64,000 nucleotides of DNA from the IMG/VR virus record IMGVR_UViG_3300046516_001816, positions 1 to 64,000 of that record; one strand, given 5' to 3'. Under the pieces are notes generated by a model. It worked only from the letters and a program-made list of their open reading frames with translations, was not told the DNA's origin and made no database searches. How positions within the stretch are numbered: the stretch's first letter is position 1; every line of letters starts with the position of its first letter. Positions 5,204-62,435 of this stretch are shown piece after piece. The position numbers and the translations under genes were made by a program.

Positions 5204-5712
5204 TCGCGCACCAGCCCCTGTCCCATGACGCGATTGCCAATTTCGACGTAGCGATGTTGATTGCGGGCTCGCGTGGTTTCACCGATTACGACCAGTTTGT
5301 GCAGACGCTCGAAGAAGAGATTCTGTACGAACATCCCAAGGATTCGATCATCTTTATCACGGGCGCGGCCAAAAGCGGCCCAGATGATATGATTATCCGC
5401 TGGTGCCGCGAAAACGGCTACGCCTGGACTGAGTTCCCGGCGGATTGGGATGACATTAGCGTACCGGGTTCCTTTGTGAAGAAGAACCGGTTCGGCAAGC
5501 TTTACAATGCCGCTGCCGGCCATCAGCGCAACCGCTTGATGGCTGAAGTGATGACGCATGCGTGTATTTGGTGGGACGGCAAATCGCCGGGCACTGAAAA
5601 CATGATCCGTGAAGCTGAGCGCGTGGGCATCACGCCTAGAGTCTTTATCGTAAACGGAGAAAGGAAACGGGACACGCGTTATGACGACGTTAGGCAAGCG
5701 CAAGGAAGCTGA
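5200..5712 (+). CDS. SLOG-superfamily (DUF2493/YspA-like) nucleotide-binding protein
   Basis: Motifs IAGSRGFTDY, ITGAAKSGPD, ADWD, AAGHQRNRLM, WDGKSPGTENMI. Probable TTG start overlapping the upstream stop. Confidence 0.8.
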   Translation: MIAHQPLSHDAIANFDVAMLIAGSRGFTDYDQFVQTLEEEILYEHPKDSIIFITGAAKSGPDDMIIRWCRENGYAWTEFPADWDDISVPGSFVKKNRFGKLYNAAAGHQRNRLMAEVMTHACIWWDGKSPGTENMIREAERVGITPRVFIVNGERKRDTRYDDVRQAQGS

Positions 5713-6364
5713 GGCGTTTATTCTGAAATGGATTGCGCGCCTCGTTCCGGGCAGTGACAACGCTGGGCTCTATGGCAACATGTTTGCCAAGATGGATGAC
5801 AAGACGTTTGACGCCTTTATCAAATCAGTCGGTAAGGTGGAAACACGTCTGTCGGTGGTCGTGCCCAACTTTGCGAAAGCGAAGGTCACGATCGAAAACA
5901 ATCTGGCCATTGCCAAAGAGCTCGGGCATGACTTCTACGAACGCCTGTGGATTAAACCCAGTGATGACCAGCCGGCGTATCTGACGCGAGAGAAGTACCT
6001 CGTGATGGATTTGCCGCTGCGTCGTCAAGCACAGCTGCTGGTGAAGAAGATCTCGATTCCGGAAGACAATCAAAGTGTGGACGATCTGACGGGGCAACCG
6101 TCGGGCAAGTCGGACAGCGCCAAGATCTCGTACCCGGAAACGATGGTGCTTACTTCCCTGAAGCTCGATCGCAACCTCACCGAGTTTTTGAAGTACCGAG
6201 GCGGCGACACGCAAGGGTTCAATGCAATGAACGACAGCTTTGCCAAGACGGGGGGTGCTTCGCAAGAAGCGATCAAACATCTGGCAGGCGGTGTTCGCAG
6301 CACACAGACGCTGCGCACCATTCTCACCGCGATGCATTTCTCGGTGGCGGGTCTGGGCGAATAA
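5681..6364 (+). CDS. Virion RNA polymerase beta subunit, C-terminal fragment (gp149-like)
   Basis: Motifs LPLRRQAQLLVKKIS, DDLTGQP, KISYPE, EFLKYRGGD, resembling the beta C-terminal TGQP...GE...D region. Confidence 0.8.
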   Translation: MTTLGKRKEAEAFILKWIARLVPGSDNAGLYGNMFAKMDDKTFDAFIKSVGKVETRLSVVVPNFAKAKVTIENNLAIAKELGHDFYERLWIKPSDDQPAYLTREKYLVMDLPLRRQAQLLVKKISIPEDNQSVDDLTGQPSGKSDSAKISYPETMVLTSLKLDRNLTEFLKYRGGDTQGFNAMNDSFAKTGGASQEAIKHLAGGVRSTQTLRTILTAMHFSVAGLGE

Positions 6365-31094: not shown

Positions 31095-31136
31095 GGCTAC
31101 AGAGGCTCCTAGGAGCCTCTGTAGCCTTTTATGCCG
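31095..31136 (+). terminator. Perfect palindrome followed by TTATGCCG
   Basis: GGCTACAGAGGCTCCT-AGGAGCCTCTGTAGCC then TTTTATGCCG. Confidence 0.8.
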
Positions 31137-49078: not shown

Positions 49079-49170
49079 CATCCTCATTGGAGAGTGCAGT
49101 GCACAGAATAAGGGGTAAATCTTATTCGGCATTAGAGCGCCTGCCACGAAAAGGTAGGGTTAGGTATGTC

Positions 49171-49680
49171 CTGGCCCCCGCCGAGCCCGCCTGCGCCCGC
49201 TGCGCGCCCCCCAGCCTGGTCCTCGCCCGCCCCGCGCCCCGGCCGCCGCCCGCCGCGCCCATTACGTTCTCATTTGGAGGTTTTCTTTACCATCCGGTAG
49301 ATCTTCTACCAACATTAAACCAGTCAGTGCTTTGCCGTTGTTTGCTTCGCCGTTAAGGCTTTGCTACCTAGAGGATGGGCCATCGAGCCCATCCGTCTAT
49401 ACATCTACTTCGATTTTTCCAAAAAGAAAACACTTCATGCAAGGGGTTGGTCGTTCTCCCCTGAGCTGGTCCTGTTGGGACCAGCGATCTTTTCATAGAC
49501 ACCAATATGTCATTCTAGTATTTTCTTACTGCATACTGGACATAGTTATGCATTGAGGTACTATAGAACAATAAGAAAAACAAGAGGTACCCTCAATACT
49601 TATATATGGGAAGTTATGGTTTTGGAAGAGGGGCCCATATTCTAGTAAAAGGGGGAGACCCCCTTTTACTCATATATAAG
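49171..49680. other. Non-coding divergence region: C-rich tract followed by AT-rich nested palindromes
   Basis: 49171-49260 is almost all C/G. Palindromes at 49552-49597, 49599-49608/49671-49680 and 49644-49670. Confidence 0.7.
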
Positions 49681-49763
49681 ACTGTCTACAGTTGGGGAGA
49701 AACCTTTACAAACTAACTTCAGACATATATCACCTACCTGATCCCCAATCACGGAGGTGCGAG

Positions 49764-50084: not shown

Positions 50085-50151
50085 AAACGGGGCAGGGCTT
50101 TGGCCTTGCCTTTATGCCGCTTGGCAAACTTTACTGCGCACCCAGTAGCGT

Positions 50152-54917: not shown

Positions 54918-55913
54918 ATGACGACTCATGAACGTGAGCGCGGTCGCGTGCGGTTGTATGCATGCGGTGGCGCTGGCATCAACATGGGCAGCAAGCTCGC
55001 GCACTTCAAGAACGAACCCAGCGAAGCTTACGCCCAGCTCGACACGGTTTACGTCGACACCTCTAAGTCCAACCTCCATGCGAAGATCGATGCGGAATCG
55101 ATCTATCTGATCGACGGCCTCGACGGCTCCGGTCAAGTGCGCAAGGAAAACTACGGCGCGATTTCCGAACGCGTGCGGGATATCCTGCAAACGTTCAAGC
55201 CCGTGGACCTGAACCTGATGCTGCATTCGCTCTCCGGCGGCAGCGGCTCCGTGATCGCCCCATCGATTGTCTCGGAACTGCTCTCGAAGGATCTGCCGAC
55301 CATCGTCATCTGCGTGGGTGACGACTCGACGAAGAAATTCGCCGAGAACACGCTCAATACGCTGAAGTCGTACGAGCAGATCGCGAAGCTGCGCAAGGCG
55401 CCGGTGTTGATGTACTATCTGCAAAACGGCCCCGACATGCCGCGTGCGAAGATCGACGAGCGGGTGCAGGCGCTGGTCGCCTCGCTATGCATGCTGTTCT
55501 CGCGTCGCAACCGTGAGCTCGACAGCAAAGACCTGTACAACTGGGTGAACTACCCGAATGTCACGTCGCATGCACCGGGCCTCACGGCACTCACGCTGGT
55601 TACGTCGCTCAACCCAGCTACGCTCGGCACGCTGGGCAACCTGATCTCGATCGCCACCCTCACCAAGGGTGATGTCGACCCGACGCTCTCGATTCGCCCC
55701 GAAGTGCAGTACGTGGGCTACGTCGACGATACGCTCGGCGGCGACTTCAAGGCGCCGTATCATTACGTTACCTCCGATGGTGTCTTCGGCGACGTCGCGG
55801 CGCACCTCAATGGCGTGCTGCGCGAACTCGACGACCAATCGGCAGCTCGCCTGAAAAAGGGCGGCATCAGCACCGGTGCGGACCAGGTCACTGATTCCGG
55901 CATGGTGTTGTAA
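54918..55913 (+). CDS. phuZ: Phage tubulin PhuZ
   Basis: Motifs ACGGAGIN, VDTS.SN, DGSG..R, tubulin signature SGGSGS, ELD..D, and C-terminal DSGMVL. Confidence 0.95.
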   Translation: MTTHERERGRVRLYACGGAGINMGSKLAHFKNEPSEAYAQLDTVYVDTSKSNLHAKIDAESIYLIDGLDGSGQVRKENYGAISERVRDILQTFKPVDLNLMLHSLSGGSGSVIAPSIVSELLSKDLPTIVICVGDDSTKKFAENTLNTLKSYEQIAKLRKAPVLMYYLQNGPDMPRAKIDERVQALVASLCMLFSRRNRELDSKDLYNWVNYPNVTSHAPGLTALTLVTSLNPATLGTLGNLISIATLTKGDVDPTLSIRPEVQYVGYVDDTLGGDFKAPYHYVTSDGVFGDVAAHLNGVLRELDDQSAARLKKGGISTGADQVTDSGMVL

Positions 55914-55917
55914 CTGG

Positions 55918-56505
55918 CTTAAGGACATCTTCAGGCTATGGGAGACCGTAGCCTGGAAAGTGTTCTTAGGTAACAAGGTTCTCTCGGAAAGGGCCGCAGC
56001 GTCGCGTCGTTGCGTACCCGTCTCTAGACCTGTCACGCGCCTAACCGTTGGGGATACCGCCGTAAAGAGGATACGGTATGGACCCCCAACTGACAGGCTT
56101 ACCGAGACATCCGAGAGCTACCTGTCAGTTCTTCCACCTACAACGAACAAATACAAGCCTGCTTCTTAGTGGGTTGATCATAGCGGTCTGACCAATGTCG
56201 AGACTTGAGTTCCGTTTACCGGGTTGATCGCCTGGACCGGTTCCGAATGAGGACAGAGGGTTACTGATACATGTCGGGGAGAAGACCAGTATAAGTCCGG
56301 AGTAGCTTCTGGGGATAGGTCTCGGTGTATCCGCATCGCGCGCGATCGTAAGGTCAGGAAGACCAAATCTATTTGCCAGCGTCCAGGATCGGGAAACCGA
56401 GGAGACGTTTGTGGCCCAACCATGCAATTGCGGCTGGTTTGGAATACCTACAAAACGGGGTAGGCATTCGAAAGCAGCTGCGGGTAGTAATGCGAGTGAG
56501 ACCAA
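55918..56505 (+). ncRNA. Candidate structured ncRNA or long UTR (region A)
   Basis: Many nested inverted repeats and no credible ORF. Confidence 0.55.
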
Positions 56506-56510
56506 TCATC

Positions 56511-56990
56511 ATGCATAAAAGACCTACCAAAATCATCGTCCTGCGACACGCAGAGAAACCGATCGATCCGATCGACCAGCGCTTAGCGCATCGCGGATAT
56601 AAACGGGCTGAGTACTTGGCGGAGTTCATTCCGAAGAACTTCGGGCGACCGAGCATGATCTTCGCGACCGAACCCACCAAGAGCAGCTTCCGACCGTTTC
56701 TGACGATGCAACCATTATGGGATGCAGTAAAAGAATCCTGGATGGATGTATCGATTGACGATGAGGCCGCTTTACACCTCGGGCACAAGTTGCGCGCAGG
56801 AGACCTCTCAGTTGGCGAAAACGTCGTCGTCTGCTGGCACCATGGCAAGATCCCGGAATTGATGAAGGGGCTCGGGTGCAGCGTGCACGACTACCCGGCG
56901 AAGTGGCCGGATAACGATTACAGCACCATCTACGTCGTGACCTATGAAAAGGGCGAGGCGGTGGTGTCCCAGTATAAACAGCTCTTCTAG
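56511..56990 (+). CDS. Histidine phosphatase superfamily protein (SixA/PGM-like)
   Basis: Motifs [30 protein letters not shown]. Confidence 0.85.
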
Positions 56991-56998
56991 GATTCGCA

Positions 56999-57241
56999 GT
57001 GGAAAACATCGAACAACAAGTCAAGCGCATCGTCGCTGCGCAACTCGGTCTGGAAGTGGCTGACATCAAGAACGACAGCCATATCACGCACGACCTCGGC
57101 GCGGACTCGCTCGACAAGATCGAACTCGTGATGGCGCTCGAAGACGATTTCAAGCTGGACATTCGCGACGAGGATGAAGAAAAGCTCCTCACCGTGCAGA
57201 ACATCATCGACTACGTGTCGGCCGAAAAGGCCAACGCGTAG
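56999..57241 (+). CDS. acpP: Acyl carrier protein
   Basis: 80 aa, acidic; phosphopantetheine motif [20 protein letters not shown]; TVQ..IDY. Confidence 0.95.
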
Positions 57242-57250
57242 CAGTCTTTT

Positions 57251-58144
57251 TCGGCGCGCGCCGGACGACTGGTAAGTGCGGGATACAGACCGCGCTCACC
57301 GGGGGCTCTCGTGATTCAATCAAGATCTTCTCCCGTTATAGGGACGTCCATCTTGGCGGGCGACGCGGCTTGCATACCCGCGTCGTAACCCGCGCGTGCG
57401 CGCGCCGACGGGTGAGCGTCAATCGGTGCAGTATCTAGATGTTGGTTTGTTTAGGTATTTCGGTTGACTCTTTGGAAAAGCGGCTCTTTGAAAAAGCGGT
57501 TTGGCTGACTTCGATCTCGGGCGTGGGAACCTGGGGTGGACGGGCACTCATTGACCGACTGGCGCTCACCGCTACTCGCCCTGCCTTTCGCAGGGCGCAT
57601 CTGGGCCCAATGTACACCAGCTCTTGTCGCTCGCCGCGGGCTTACATTTTTGGCGATTTGGATTCACCGCGGCTGGCGGGGGCAACAATAACGTACATTG
57701 AGGAAGATTGGCCACGACCCATTGGCCCCATCAACGCTACGGGCGCGAGAACGCGAAAGAGTACAGGTGTCAAAATGAAATAGGTTTAGCCCAGCGCACT
57801 TTTTCATGATCCCAAACCGCAAGGACTAACGGCACGCTTGGCGCCTGCCGGAAGCACGCGGGAGAGGGACGGCGATACCATTCCTATGAGTAATGGCTCT
57901 TTTTAAAGAGTCCGACGTACGAGACCCGTCCACGGGCATTACGGAGCCAAGCGGAGCTGCCTGCGCGATCTACGCATCGCCAATAGGAGTGACCGCCTAC
58001 CTGCTGTAAGCGTGAGTCTCACTGAAGTCGAGATAGGACCGCAACTGCTCAGCGTGGGAAATATAGAGCACACCCGGAAGGGCTTCCAGGATCGTGAGCG
58101 CGAGCCACGAAGCGAAGCCCTTCCCCCTTCTTTCTTTTATGCCG
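57251..58144 (+). ncRNA. Candidate large multi-domain structured ncRNA (region B, about 900 nt)
   Basis: At least four long-range closing helices; ends in a terminator + TTATGCCG; no credible ORF. Confidence 0.6.
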
Positions 58145-58230
58145 TCAGGACGCGTTTACAGCCTCTGTAGCGGCTTGGTTACAATAAAGAAATACCGGAC
58201 ACCGGAATCATGTGTCCATAAGGAGCTAGC

Positions 58231-58605
58231 ATGCATAGACAAGCGGTTCTGGTCCAAGACATCGGGCAGTTGCGTTCCATGCTGGACCCGGTGATCTGTT
58301 CTGTTCTGGAACCCTTTATCTATGTCGGCTTGACATTGGAGGGGGTGATCGAATGGATCATCAAGGAAGAGCTGTGGAAGGCCTATCAGTTTCCGATTGA
58401 CAACCATTTCCCCAAACAAAACCCGCATCGTGAGTTCTACAATCTTGTTAAAAGCAAGATGGAACACCCGACGTTGGAACAAGTCGTTCAGCATTTCGTT
58501 CGTGTCCCCAAGTTATACGGCGACAATTTGGCCGTTGTCGCTGTGAAAGGACGGAATCTGTACATTCATTATTACTTAAACCAACAACTCCAATACCCAA
58601 CATGA
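58231..58605 (+). CDS. Hypothetical protein (paralog array member)
   Basis: AAGGAG upstream; C-terminal KGRNLYI. Confidence 0.72.
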   Translation: MHRQAVLVQDIGQLRSMLDPVICSVLEPFIYVGLTLEGVIEWIIKEELWKAYQFPIDNHFPKQNPHREFYNLVKSKMEHPTLEQVVQHFVRVPKLYGDNLAVVAVKGRNLYIHYYLNQQLQYPT

Positions 58606-61890: not shown

Positions 61891-62003
61891 TAGTATGTAG
61901 GGCATAAAGCAGGGAAGATAGTAGTTCGGGGGTAGTACGAGCAGGACCGCAGGTTGACCATGTTGTACCGTTGTAGAAGTGTTTCAGTTTCCTTGGTAAT
62001 TGT

Positions 62004-62037
62004 GCCTAGTCATCCCCCCGGGTGACTAGGTCTTTTT
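62004..62037 (+). terminator. Rho-independent terminator
   Basis: Stem CCTAGTCATCC/GGGTGACTAGG followed by TCTTTTT. Confidence 0.75.
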
Positions 62038-62079
62038 GCCGGCATGTGGTTGATTAGTATAAAACTTATCGCGTTTGTA

Positions 62080-62435
62080 TATGTTACGACGGAGTGCCAT
62101 GCTCCGTGTAGGAAGGGTGTTGATGCGTGCTCCTCGGGCTTTTGGTGGCGGGCGCGGGCAGCAACACTAATGGGATCGGCTAAACCCATTTGCTAAGTGT
62201 CGAAAGATGACGACAGCGAGAATCTCGTTGGGGAACGAGAAGACGCCAACCAGGAAGGGTTGAAGCTGGTTTCTTTAAAGGTGGTGTGCCAAGGCTTTTC
62301 CTTGGGGCATGCGGTGCATCACTGAACACGGGGCTGATCGCGCCCTCGTGAAGGAGAAGCTAAGCTCCCGTTCCTGTTTTTCACGTTGGGGAGGGTCTTT
62401 CGGGAACCCTCCCCTTCTTTTTTCCTTTTATGCCG
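62080..62435 (+). ncRNA. Candidate stand-alone sRNA made of tandem hairpins (region C)
   Basis: Seven or more consecutive hairpins bounded by two terminators. Confidence 0.5.

What the first reader, a model, noticed from the sequence alone, without database searches (positions are those of the whole stretch)
57251..58144. About 900-nt multi-domain structured non-coding region downstream of the phage ACP gene
In a gene-dense genome this stretch has no credible ORF but is tiled by long-range helices: TCGGCGCGCGC 57251-61 / GCGCGCGCCGA 57398-408; GGTGAGCGTCAATCGGT 57411-27 / ACCGACTGGCGCTCACC 57554-70; CGCCCTGC 57577-84 / 57590-97; CTGGGC 57601-06 / GCCCAG 57789-94 enclosing CAATGTAC / GTACATTG; CGCTTGGC 57835-42 / GCCAAGCG 57946-53; then terminator 58076-124 + TTATGCCG. 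G-U-compatible mismatches on the + strand point to RNA structure. I see no hallmarks of tRNA, tmRNA, RNase P, SRP or hammerhead ribozymes. Inference: a large ncRNA of GOLLD/ROOL size, possibly a new class.
Basis: partly seen in the sequence, partly recalled or inferred. Interest (0 to 1): 0.85.

Follow-up and report, generated by a model that had tools for sequence, protein, structure and literature searches.

The report
New large structured jumbo-phage RNA
The gene-free stretch after the phage acyl-carrier-protein gene is a real, conserved, about 890-nt multi-domain folded RNA that matches no described RNA family, so it adds a new class to the very short list of giant structured phage RNAs whose function is unknown.

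Summary
Window 57244-58134 (+) has no conserved ORF. Homologs exist in at least nine other jumbo-phage contigs (soil, rhizosphere, root), always in the synteny tubulin (PhuZ-like) | gene-free ~600 nt | SixA-like phosphatase | ACP | this element | ORF124.

Sequence is conserved only in blocks, but the helices are kept through compensatory changes:
- 3' domain: 96% of cells paired against 44-56% in slid controls, 13 of 19 pairs changed on both sides.
- Central-3' domain: 89% against 36-42%, 17 of 35 pairs.
- The closing helices of three 5' domains recur in nearly all homologs with different sequences.

An H-type pseudoknot and a terminal hairpin with an invariant internal loop are conserved. The RNA ends at the phage's generic terminator signal (hairpin + UUUAUGCCG, 31 copies in the genome).

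Rfam 15 gives no hit at E<=10 in the window or at E<=5 in eight homologous loci. Literature searches found nothing matching.

Four of nine relatives have tRNA genes beside it, as with GOLLD and ROOL, but it belongs to neither family. Function is inferred only.

The upstream gene-free region (55914-56510) is a second, even more strongly structured conserved RNA that carries the same hairpin module.

The parts
57244..58134 (+). The whole element ('ncB'): about 890-nt structured non-coding RNA. It runs from the conserved GUUUU..UCGGCGCGC start just after the ACP stop codon to the end of the terminal hairpin and U-rich tail.
   Evidence: nhmmer and CM homologs in L002, L003, L094, L095 (5' part only), L098, L099/L101, L103, L104-L108 and L117. 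No conserved ORF. No Rfam hit.
57251..57408 (+). Domain 1, closed by helix P1 (57251-61 with 57398-408). It holds a hairpin at 57269-57302 with the conserved loop GGGAUACAGACC, plus a GCGGG...CCCGC hairpin. This is the most variable domain: two to four hairpins depending on the phage.
   Evidence: P1 is kept in 10 of 10 homologs with compensatory variants: UCGGCGCAC/GUGCGCCGA in L099, GCAGCGCGC/GCGCGCUGC in L003, CCGGCGC/GCGCCGG in L104. End-to-end closure is 7-14 bp against about 3.4 bp in shuffles.
57411..57570 (+). Domain 2, closed by P2/P2a (57411-27 with 57554-70). It contains the most conserved block of the RNA, GGACGGGCACUCAUUGACC (57538-57556; consensus GC.(C/U)UCAUURAC).
   Evidence: P2a covaries: UCGG/CCGA, CCGG/CCGG, UCAG/CUGA, CCAG/CUGG, UGGG/CCCA. 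P2 differs between clades: GUGAGCG/CGCUCAC against CGCGA/UCGCG. Independent folds close this domain in 8 of 10 homologs. End-to-end pairing is 8-18 bp against about 3 bp in shuffles.
57577..57597 (+). P3 hairpin (optional).
   Evidence: A hairpin sits at this place in 6 of 10 homologs with entirely different stem sequences: CGCCCUGC, CGCCCCUC, CGUCGCCC, CAGCCCCC, CUCUCGGC, CUGCCGGCG. It is absent in L098, L104, L117 and L103.
57606..57703 (+). Domain 3: a long stem-loop. P4a is CC 57606-07 with GG 57702-03. P4 is CAAUGUAC 57608-15 with GUACAUUG 57693-700. The apical extension is G+C-rich.
   Evidence: Separate MFE folds give the same architecture in 10 of 10 homologs. The P4 sequences all differ: AUGCC/GGCAU, AUGUC/GACAU, CUCGC/GCGAG, AUCC/GGAU, CAUC/GAUG, CUUAUC/GAUAAG. 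End-to-end pairing is 11-13 bp against about 4 bp in shuffles in 9 of 10. MAFFT cannot align this region.
57710..57727 (+). P5 hairpin: stem GGCCA/UGGCC with the near-invariant loop CGACCCAU.
   Evidence: Five pairs are present in 10 of 10 homologs. C-G changes to U-A in 4 sequences and A-U to G-C in 1.
57728..57990 (+). Central region. It holds the conserved AUGAAAU (57776-82) and several hairpins. In relatives it holds P6, P7, P8, P9 and P10.
   Evidence: In the relatives, 35 pairs in 8 helices are 88.9% paired against 36-42% in slid controls, and 17 pairs changed on both sides. The window aligns to this model only from 57961.
58038..58069 (+). H-type pseudoknot. S1 is ACCGC 58038-42 with GUGGG 58054-58. 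S2 is GCUC 58047-50 with GAGC 58066-69. It is preceded by the conserved GA.GUCRUGAYGG.
   Evidence: S1: the G-U pair is replaced by C-G in 3 lineages. S2 variants: GCUC/GAGC, GCCC/GGGC, GUCC/GGAC, ACUC/GAGU. The two stems interleave.
58076..58124 (+). Terminal hairpin module. An 11-12 bp stem is followed by an invariant asymmetric internal loop (5' AGGAU, 3' AG, plus one bulged base) and a short inner hairpin CG...CG.
   Evidence: Eleven of 12 stem pairs changed on both sides and 97% of cells are paired. The loop sequence CUUCCAGGAUCG is invariant in 9 of 9. A second copy of the module lies at 56376-56414.
58125..58146 (+). U-rich tail and the UUUUAUGCCGU signal: the phage's generic terminator (possibly terminator plus promoter) motif that marks the end of the transcription unit.
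   Evidence: There are 31 copies of T3+ATGC(C/T)G in the 285-kb genome, nearly all directly after a G+C-rich hairpin. The motif is also conserved after the element in L094, L104 and L117, and in Burkholderia phage FLC9.
55914..56510 (+). Companion element 'ncA': a second conserved, structured gene-free region between the tubulin-like gene and the phosphatase gene. It carries the same hairpin module (56376-56414).
   Evidence: An alignment of 7 homologs gives 102 predicted pairs, 48 with compensatory changes. z ranges from -3.9 to -10.2. No Rfam hit. The 97-aa ORF at 55876-56169 is not called in any relative.

Best explanation
SHOWN: window 57244-58134 (+) encodes a previously undescribed family of large (about 800-900 nt), multi-domain folded RNA.
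- It is carried by a clade of soil and rhizosphere jumbo phages that encode a PhuZ-like tubulin.
- It has at least three helix-closed 5' domains, a conserved hairpin with the loop CGACCCAU, a nested central-3' domain, an H-type pseudoknot, and a terminal hairpin with an invariant internal loop.
- It lies on the coding strand at the end of the tubulin-phosphatase-ACP gene block and stops at the phage's generic terminator signal.

INFERRED:
- It is made as the 3' end of that transcript.
- Where tRNA genes abut it (L002, L098, L117, and L003 at a short distance), tRNA-processing enzymes release it as a discrete stable RNA.
- It acts through its three-dimensional fold rather than by base-pairing to a target. 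It would be an architectural or scaffold RNA of the GOLLD/ROOL kind, possibly self-assembling or binding a phage or host factor through the conserved unpaired blocks and the hairpin module.
- It probably works together with the upstream structured RNA (ncA), which carries the same module.

The confidence given (0.6) is for the whole statement. I hold the claim that this is a genuine new structured RNA family at about 0.9, and the scaffold or assembly mechanism at about 0.25.
For: Homologs in nine further contigs share the same synteny.

Covariation:
- 3' domain: 96.3% paired against 44-56% slid. 13 of 19 pairs changed on both sides. 0 of 500 shuffles reach the observed values.
- Central-3' domain: 88.9% against 36-42% slid. 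17 of 35 pairs changed on both sides. 0-2 of 500 shuffles.
- P1, P2/P2a, P3, P4 and P5 are kept with different sequences.
- Both pseudoknot stems covary.

Other support:
- G-U 41 against A-C 12 favours + strand RNA.
- No conserved ORF.
- No Rfam family.
- One copy per genome.
- The upstream neighbour varies: ACP, an extra 155-aa or 46-aa ORF, or a tRNA. The element is therefore an independent module, not simply the ACP 3' UTR.
- tRNA genes lie next to it in 4 of 9 relatives.
- It ends at the genome-wide hairpin + UUUAUGCCG signal.
- Contigs of a close relative occur in four root metatranscriptome libraries.
- GOLLD and ROOL are likewise phage-borne, often beside tRNA islands, and GOLLD has a conserved 3' and variable 5' region (10.1101/2024.12.08.627333).
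Against: - There is no direct evidence for a discrete stable transcript, its ends or its abundance. The RNA-seq contigs have about the same depth as the neighbouring genes, and DNA carry-over cannot be excluded.
- No run was listed that holds the window's own element.
- Thermodynamic z-scores are modest.
- In the window's phage the tRNA genes are 158 kb away, so the tRNA link is facultative.
- No conserved self-complementary loop that would predict oligomerisation was found.
- The family is small: ten sequences in about four clades, so some covariation counts reflect few events.
- The alignments used for counting were fitted to the model structure.
Confidence: 0.6

Rival explanations
1. Cis-acting untranslated regions. 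On this view ncA (5') and ncB (3') are giant structured leader and trailer of the phosphatase-ACP mRNA. They would control its stability, translation or processing, for example by blocking exonucleases or binding a regulator through the shared hairpin module. They would not be trans-acting RNAs.
For: - Both structured regions flank the same two small genes in every homolog and share the AGGAU/AG hairpin module.
- All lie on one strand, apparently in one transcription unit bounded by terminator signals at 50111 and 58135.
- RNA-seq contig depth is similar to that of the genes.
Against: - About 1.5 kb of conserved structure for 0.72 kb of coding sequence would be without precedent.
- Extra ORFs or a tRNA are inserted between ACP and ncB in L003, L095, L098 and L117 without loss of the element.
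- A tRNA between ACP and ncB would sever the trailer from the mRNA.
- No conserved complementarity exists between ncA and ncB.
Confidence: 0.2
2. RNA component of a ribonucleoprotein with a neighbouring gene product (ACP, the SixA-like phosphatase, ORF124 or ORF218), as OLE RNA works with the Oap proteins.
For: - The synteny of the RNA with these genes is strict in all full-length homologs.
- The invariant unpaired blocks and the conserved internal loop look like recognition sites.
- The neighbours have no known function.
Against: - No neighbour has a recognisable RNA-binding domain.
- Synteny in phages is often just inheritance.
- Phosphatase homologs occur in other phages without the RNA.
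Confidence: 0.1
3. A ribozyme or a remnant of a mobile RNA element (group I or II intron, retroelement template, guide RNA of a nuclease).
For: Its size, several domains, a pseudoknot and conserved unpaired nucleotides are typical of large ribozymes.
Against: - No match to any intron, RNase P, self-cleaving ribozyme or guide-RNA family at E<=10 in the window or E<=5 in eight homologous loci.
- It interrupts no gene.
- No reverse transcriptase, endonuclease or transposase is nearby.
- It sits at a fixed genomic position, one copy per genome.
Confidence: 0.04
4. A DNA-level element, such as a replication origin or a centromere-like site for the adjacent tubulin (as tubC is for TubZ systems).
For: It lies within 1.4 kb of the tubulin gene, is gene-free and is rich in inverted repeats.
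Against: - Helices are maintained by compensatory changes with G-U, not A-C, intermediates on the + strand.
- There are no iterated direct repeats.
- A terminator closes it.
- PhuZ phages RSL2, RP12 and RTH11 lack any such region.
Confidence: 0.03
5. A decayed gene or spacer whose helices are chance products of G+C-rich sequence.
For: The window's own z-score is weak. Both strands fold about equally well.
Against: - Conserved blocks, indels that are not multiples of three, and helix-preserving double changes well beyond the shuffled and slid controls.
- The same domain closures appear in up to 10 of 10 divergent sequences.
Confidence: 0.02

Closest known systems
[quoted passage not shown]
   Same: - Phage- or prophage-encoded.
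- About 800 nt or more.
- Many helices and pseudoknots.
- Often beside tRNA islands.
- Conserved 3' region with a less conserved 5' region.
- No known protein partner or function (10.1101/2024.12.08.627333).

Here: 800-900 nt, variable domain 1, conserved 3' half, and tRNA genes adjacent in 4 of 9 relatives.
   Different: - No sequence or structure match to the Rfam library, in which I understand GOLLD is held.
- Different hosts: jumbo phages with PhuZ-like tubulin from soil and rhizosphere.
- It comes paired with a second structured RNA (ncA).
- Multimer formation is untested.
ROOL RNA (Rumen-Originating, Ornate, Large)
   Same: A large ornate RNA of phages and prophages, often near tRNA islands, with several pseudoknots and unknown function.
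   Different: [quoted passage not shown] There is no model match here. Here the domains are mostly serial and each is closed by its own helix.
OLE RNA
   Same: A large (about 600 nt) ornate RNA with blocks of invariant nucleotides, fixed in one gene neighbourhood.
   Different: OLE is bacterial (Gram-positive extremophiles and anaerobes) and works with the Oap proteins (PMC9723947 abstract). There is no model match here and no such proteins nearby.
The 712-nt gene-free region after the tubulin gene of Burkholderia phage FLC9 (LC667451.1, L196:5494-6205)
   Same: - Same position: directly downstream of the closest cultured tubulin homolog (43% identity).
- Followed by the ORF124-like gene.
- Ends in a hairpin + UUUUUUUAUGCCGU.
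- Strongly structured, z = -7.0.
   Different: - No detectable sequence or model similarity to ncA or ncB.
- No phosphatase or ACP genes there.
- No homolog in GenBank phages.
- Homology is therefore unproven. It is a positional analogue only.

Membership tests
GOLLD RNA | Scores with the family's covariance model (Rfam) | tested here: not met
   cmscan of the whole window at gathering score gave 0 hits. Scanning 57100-58300 at E<=10 gave only a chance snoRNA hit. Eight homologous loci at E<=5 gave nothing inside the element.
GOLLD RNA | Encoded by phages or prophages, often next to tRNA islands | tested here: met
   The window is part of a 285-kb virus record. tRNA genes abut the element in L002, L098 and L117 and lie about 440 nt from it in L003. 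This is not so in the window's own genome, where the tRNAs are at 215.7-216.8 kb.
GOLLD RNA | Conserved 3' region and less conserved 5' region | tested here: met
   Domain 1 varies in hairpin number and L003 lacks part of it. The 3' 140 positions score 113-134 bits in all homologs. This is a resemblance in layout, not homology.
GOLLD / ROOL RNA | Self-assembles into a homo-oligomeric RNA-only nanocage | not testable with these tools
   This needs native gels, mass photometry or cryo-EM of the transcript.
ROOL RNA | Scores with the family's covariance model (Rfam) | tested here: not met
Group I / group II introns, RNase P RNA, tmRNA, OLE, known self-cleaving ribozymes | Match to the family model; for tmRNA and tRNA also ARAGORN | tested here: not met
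   No Rfam match. ARAGORN finds no tRNA or tmRNA in the window. The element interrupts no gene.
Structured non-coding RNA (generic) | Helices maintained by compensatory changes beyond controls | tested here: met
   0-2 of 500 shuffles reach the observed values, and slid controls are 36-56% paired against 89-96% observed. Searches cover the 5' helices.
Structured non-coding RNA (generic) | No conserved open reading frame | tested here: met
   ORFs inside the element differ in frame, strand and position between homologs. Gene callers left the gap empty in most contigs.
Structured non-coding RNA (generic) | Transcribed as a stable RNA | tested here: inconclusive
   Contigs of a close relative of L002 cover the element in four RNA-seq libraries, but at the depth of the neighbouring genes, and DNA carry-over is possible. 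No run was listed for the window's own sequence.
Intrinsic (factor-independent) terminator | Stable G+C-rich hairpin followed by a U-rich tract at the end of a transcription unit | tested here: met
   The 58076-58124 hairpin is followed by CCCCCUUCUUUCUUUUAUGCCG. The same hairpin + UUUAUGCCG arrangement occurs 31 times in the genome. The simple scanner missed it because its loop limit is 8 nt.
H-type pseudoknot | Two interleaved stems, each supported by covariation | tested here: met
   S1: G-U changes to C-G in 3 lineages. S2: four different paired sequences. The order of strands is S1-5', S2-5', S1-3', S2-3'.

The most novel reading that the evidence does not exclude
PhuZ-encoding (probably nucleus-forming) jumbo phages of soil proteobacteria carry a new class of giant structured RNAs at a fixed place next to the tubulin gene.
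- There are two per locus in this clade, ncA of about 600 nt and ncB of about 890 nt. They share a hairpin module with an invariant 5x2 internal loop.
- An unrelated-looking but very strongly folded 712-nt RNA sits at the same place in the cultured Burkholderia phage FLC9.
- These RNAs would act as RNA-only or RNA-protein architectures comparable to GOLLD and ROOL nanocages, in a phage lineage and cell-biological setting where no such RNA is known.
Probability: 0.3. Interest if true: 0.88.

Novelty: new variant of a known kind. Interest (0 to 1): 0.78.

Why it matters
Very few bacterial or phage RNAs larger than 500 nt with elaborate conserved folds are known: GOLLD, ROOL, OLE, HEARO, raiA and the classical ribozymes. 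Each new one has proved informative. Cryo-EM recently showed that GOLLD and ROOL form RNA-only cages.

This element is a new, independently evolved example with good covariation support. It sits in jumbo phages that build a tubulin spindle, and it comes with a partner RNA and a recurring hairpin module.

It gives structural biologists a defined 890-nt construct (57244-58134) to test for folding and self-assembly. It also gives phage biologists a candidate function to look for. The related locus in the cultured Burkholderia phage FLC9 could make the question experimentally tractable.

Tried and rejected
Searches that found no further members:
- DNA search of GenBank phages with the element: no match.
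- Exact-pattern scans with the 18-nt core in metagenome and genome collections: 19 hits, all chance, with unrelated flanks.
- The pattern GGACCGCAACNNNCTCAGCGTGG was mis-specified, because the spacer is 2-3 nt.
- The pattern CACGACCCATTGRCT in IMG/VR gave 79 hits, with no new member by nhmmer.
- Seventy ACP-linked IMG/VR loci: only the three known phages carry the element.
- The downstream ORF124 found no relatives in IMG/VR.

Methods that failed:
- mafft-qinsi was not functional.
- MAFFT + RNAalifold fails on the variable domains, so per-sequence folds and covariance models were used instead.
- A full-length RNAduplex of ncA against ncB was meaningless.

Structural ideas considered and dropped, all by inspection:
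- A kink-turn in the hairpin module: the G-A/A-G register does not fit in most homologs.
- An 11-nt tetraloop receptor in ncA (CCUAAG...UAUGG): the flanks do not pair.
- Pairing of the P5 loop CCCAU with AUGGG of the 3' domain: no compensation in L003 or L117.
- Pairing of GUCRUGA with UCAUURAC: no covariation.
- A long-range CCUUG/CGAGG helix: at noise level.
- Conserved complementarity between ncA and ncB: none at 6-8 nt.

Other negatives:
- Literature searches for a described jumbo-phage large RNA found nothing matching.
- The phosphatase has no Pfam, PHROG or PDB sequence match. Its label rests on one JGI name and on RHA...HH motifs read from the translation.
Full report
**1. What is in the window**

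The window is the first 64 kb of a 284,983-bp virus record. Genes around the finding all lie on the + strand:
- a tubulin/FtsZ-family gene with a phage TubZ C-terminal domain (54918-55913);
- a gene-free 600 nt;
- a 159-aa protein (56511-56990) that one source names a SixA phosphohistidine phosphatase;
- an 80-aa acyl carrier protein (56999-57241; Pfam PP-binding 3.5e-11);
- the finding's region;
- ORF124 (58231-58605) and further ORFs with no Pfam or PHROG family.

The only sizeable ORF inside (57439-57783) has no family match and no counterpart in relatives.

**2. Known families excluded**

- Rfam 15 (4227 models) gives nothing in the whole window at gathering score.
- At E<=10 in 57100-58300 there is only a chance snoRNA hit.
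- At E<=5 there is nothing inside the element in eight homologous loci. Those scans did find the flanking tRNAs, so they worked.
- ARAGORN finds no tRNA or tmRNA in the window.
- Folding energy alone is unimpressive. For the window z is -1.7 (20 shuffles) and -2.4 (12 shuffles). The minus strand gives -1.5. Across nine homologs the mean is about -2.7, ranging from +0.9 to -7.4.

**3. Homologs**

Exact-pattern scans with the most conserved 18-mer in the metagenome and genome collections returned only chance matches. GenBank phages hold nothing similar.

Relatives came in through the neighbouring phosphatase gene:
- two IMG/VR contigs, L002 and L003;
- through its protein homologs, contigs from JGI, Logan and NCBI assemblies.

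nhmmer found the element in L094, L095 (5' part only, at the contig end), L098, L099/L101, L103, L104-L108 and L117. That makes ten distinct sequences in about four clades.

All share the order tubulin | gap | phosphatase | ACP | element | ORF124. Some relatives have additions:
- L003 and L095 have an extra 155-aa ORF between ACP and the element.
- L098 has a 46-aa ORF there.
- L117 has a tRNA-Thr there.
- L002 and L098 have tRNA genes starting right after the terminal hairpin. In L003 a tRNA array follows after one small ORF.

Other facts about distribution:
- The window's own four tRNA genes lie at 215.7-216.8 kb.
- Seventy other ACP-carrying phage loci, and two other phage groups that have the phosphatase, lack the element.
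- There is one copy per genome.

**4. Conservation pattern**

Sequence identity is confined to blocks:
- UCGGCGCGC / GCGCGCCGA;
- GGGAUACAGACC;
- GC.CUCAUURAC;
- AGYCACGACCCAUUGRCU;
- AUGAAAU;
- CAUAUAG;
- CUAAUUGCUG;
- GA.GUCRUGAYGGGACCSCAAC..CUCAGCGKGG.AA..AUAGAG;
- CUUCCAGGAUCG.

Between the blocks, lengths differ by indels that are not multiples of three, and sequences are unalignable by MAFFT.

**5. Structure and covariation**

*3' domain.* A covariance model of the 3' domain (R1) aligned all homologs.
- Of its 19 pairs, 96.3% of cells are standard pairs, against 44-56% when partners are slid by 1-3 columns.
- 13 pairs changed on both sides.
- No shuffle in 500 reached any observed measure.

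*Central-3' domain.* A second model (R2) has 35 pairs in 8 helices.
- 88.9% of cells are paired, against 36-42% slid.
- 17 pairs changed on both sides.
- 0-2 of 500 shuffles reached the observed values.
- These alignments are fitted to the models, which favours the structure. The slid control shares that bias only partly.

*5' half.*
- P1 has three independent compensatory variants.
- P2a shows five different paired sequences.
- P2 differs completely between clades.
- P3 is a hairpin with six unrelated stem sequences, and is absent in four homologs.
- P4/P4a is found by separate MFE folding in 10 of 10 homologs, with at least six different stem sequences.
- P5 keeps 5 pairs in 10 of 10 with C-G to U-A exchanges.
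- End-to-end closure of domains 1, 2 and 3 is 7-18 bp in nearly every homolog, against 3-4 bp in shuffled sequence.

*Pseudoknot.* The stems ACCSC/GKGGU and GCUC/GAGC interleave, and both covary.

*Strand.* Among modelled pairs, G-U occurs 41 times and A-C 12 times, as expected for an RNA read from the + strand.

CGCTTGGC/GCCAAGCG lies in the stretch (57847-57960) where the window's copy departs from all relatives, so it cannot be judged.

**6. The 3' end**

The terminal hairpin (58076-58124) has a stem in which 11 of 12 pairs changed on both sides. Its internal loop, in contrast, is invariant.

It is followed by a U-rich run and UUUUAUGCCGU. A genome scan shows 31 copies of T3+ATGC(C/T)G, almost all right after a G+C-rich hairpin. 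In the window these lie at 31127, 50111, 58135 and 62426 (+) and 11877 (-). This is evidently the phage's standard terminator signal. It may double as a promoter signal, by analogy with the TATG late promoters of phiKZ-like phages, which I recall from memory.

The element is therefore the last part of a transcription unit.

The hairpin is nevertheless special. Its module (stem, 5' AGGAU / 3' AG loop, inner CG..CG hairpin) occurs only twice in 285 kb. The second copy is at 56376-56414, and the equivalent place in L003 has one too.

**7. A second structured RNA**

That second copy lies in the gene-free region between the tubulin and phosphatase genes (55914-56510).
- The region is conserved in seven homologs in the same block-wise way.
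- RNAalifold predicts 102 pairs, 48 with compensatory changes.
- z-scores run from -3.9 to -10.2.
- It has no Rfam match.
- The 97-aa ORF there is not called in any relative.

The phosphatase-ACP pair is thus bracketed by two large folded RNAs. No conserved complementary word of 6-8 nt links the two.

**8. Expression**

- No sequencing run was listed for the window's own element.
- For L002's element, DNA runs from soil and rhizosphere hold it fully.
- Four root metatranscriptome libraries hold parts of a close relative.
- Laid on L002, their contigs cover the element. One 3.5-kb contig spans phosphatase, ACP, an inserted 625 nt, the element and the first tRNAs. Three shorter contigs cover domains 1-2.

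Depths equal those of the neighbouring genes. Contigs carry no strand or end information, and DNA carry-over cannot be excluded. This is consistent with transcription but is not proof.

**9. Relatives among cultured phages**

The tubulin is closest to that of Burkholderia phage FLC9 (43% identity), followed by Xanthomonas and Ralstonia jumbo phages annotated PhuZ.

In FLC9 the tubulin gene is followed by a 770-nt gene-free gap and then homologs of the ORF124 block.
- The gap folds far better than shuffles, with z = -7.0.
- It ends in a hairpin plus UUUUUUUAUGCCGU.
- It has no Rfam hit and no relative in GenBank phages.
- It shows no detectable similarity to ncA or ncB.

RTH11, RSL2 and RP12 have no such gap. 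FLC9 may carry a positional analogue. Homology is unproven.

**10. Interpretation**

Shown:
- The element is a conserved, multi-domain, + strand RNA structure.
- It is absent from Rfam 15, and targeted literature searches found no description of it.

Inferred:
- It is a functional folded RNA rather than an mRNA trailer. It keeps its integrity while its upstream neighbour changes, and in several phages it is bounded by tRNA genes whose processing would cut it free.
- Its layout and context resemble GOLLD and ROOL: a variable 5' domain, a conserved 3' half, pseudoknots, a phage origin and frequent tRNA neighbours. It fails their model test, so it works perhaps like them but is not a member.
- The main rival is that ncA and ncB are cis-acting untranslated regions of the phosphatase-ACP message.

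Nothing here tells what the RNA does. The scaffold or assembly mechanism is my best guess, at roughly one chance in four. The claim that this is a genuine new structured RNA family I hold at about 0.9.

Noticed in passing
window 55914-56510 (+): A second conserved, strongly structured gene-free region (ncA) lies between the tubulin-like and phosphatase genes. It has 102 predicted pairs, 48 compensatory, and z from -3.9 to -10.2. It carries a copy of the terminal-hairpin module at 56376-56414. The ORF at 55876-56169 is probably spurious.
   Followed up: partly
window 31127, 50111, 58135, 62426 (+) and 11877 (-); 31 sites genome-wide: A genome-wide signal consisting of a G+C-rich hairpin directly followed by (C)UUU(U)AUGCCG(U/C). 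It is most likely the phage's standard terminator, perhaps combined with a promoter. It is also present in Burkholderia phage FLC9.
   Followed up: partly
L196:5494-6205 (Burkholderia phage FLC9, LC667451.1 7078-7789, minus strand): A 712-nt unannotated gene-free region directly after the tubulin gene of a cultured jumbo phage. It folds with z = -7.0, has no Rfam hit and no relative in GenBank phages, and shows no detectable similarity to ncA or ncB. It is a possible positional analogue and an experimental handle.
   Followed up: partly
window 58147-58230 (+): A conserved leader of ORF124 (GUAAAGAAAUACC.GACACCGGAAU.AUGUG...AAGGAGCUA) is shared with L094, L104, L117, L099 and L103, and in part with FLC9. 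It is probably a promoter or 5' UTR element.
   Followed up: no
window 61906-62425 (+) and 49148-49691 (+): Two more stretches with no ORF of 100 aa or more. The first ends at a terminator signal (62426). z is -2.5 and -3.1 respectively. No comparative analysis was done.
   Followed up: partly
own genome G000:C1:202921-205317 (outside the window): A 2.4-kb stretch without any ORF of 100 aa or more, the longest in the genome. Other such gaps are at 94252-95094, 148062-148626 and 231613-232195.
   Followed up: no
L002:6477-6554: ARAGORN reports a tRNA of undetermined identity with a four-base anticodon (cgaa) inside the tRNA array that follows the element. It could be a frameshift-suppressor-like tRNA or a miscall.
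   Followed up: no
L003:6390-6474 (-) and 5610-5719 (-): Weak sub-threshold matches to the Y RNA-like family YrlA (E 7e-4 and 0.06, 35 and 28 bits against a gathering score of 69) lie inside the tRNA array downstream of the element. They may only reflect tRNA-like modules.
   Followed up: no
L098:4918-5726: This homolog looks recombinant. Its 5' half (domains 1-2) is closest to L002, at 77% over 345 nt. Its 3' half shares long identical stretches with L099 and L103.
   Followed up: no
window 56511-56990 (+): The 'phosphatase' has no Pfam, PHROG or PDB sequence match. The label rests on one JGI annotation and on LRHAEK / CWHHGK motifs typical of the histidine-phosphatase fold. In other phages its homologs sit beside radical-SAM, 2OG-Fe(II) oxygenase and tRNA methyltransferase-like genes.
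   Followed up: partly
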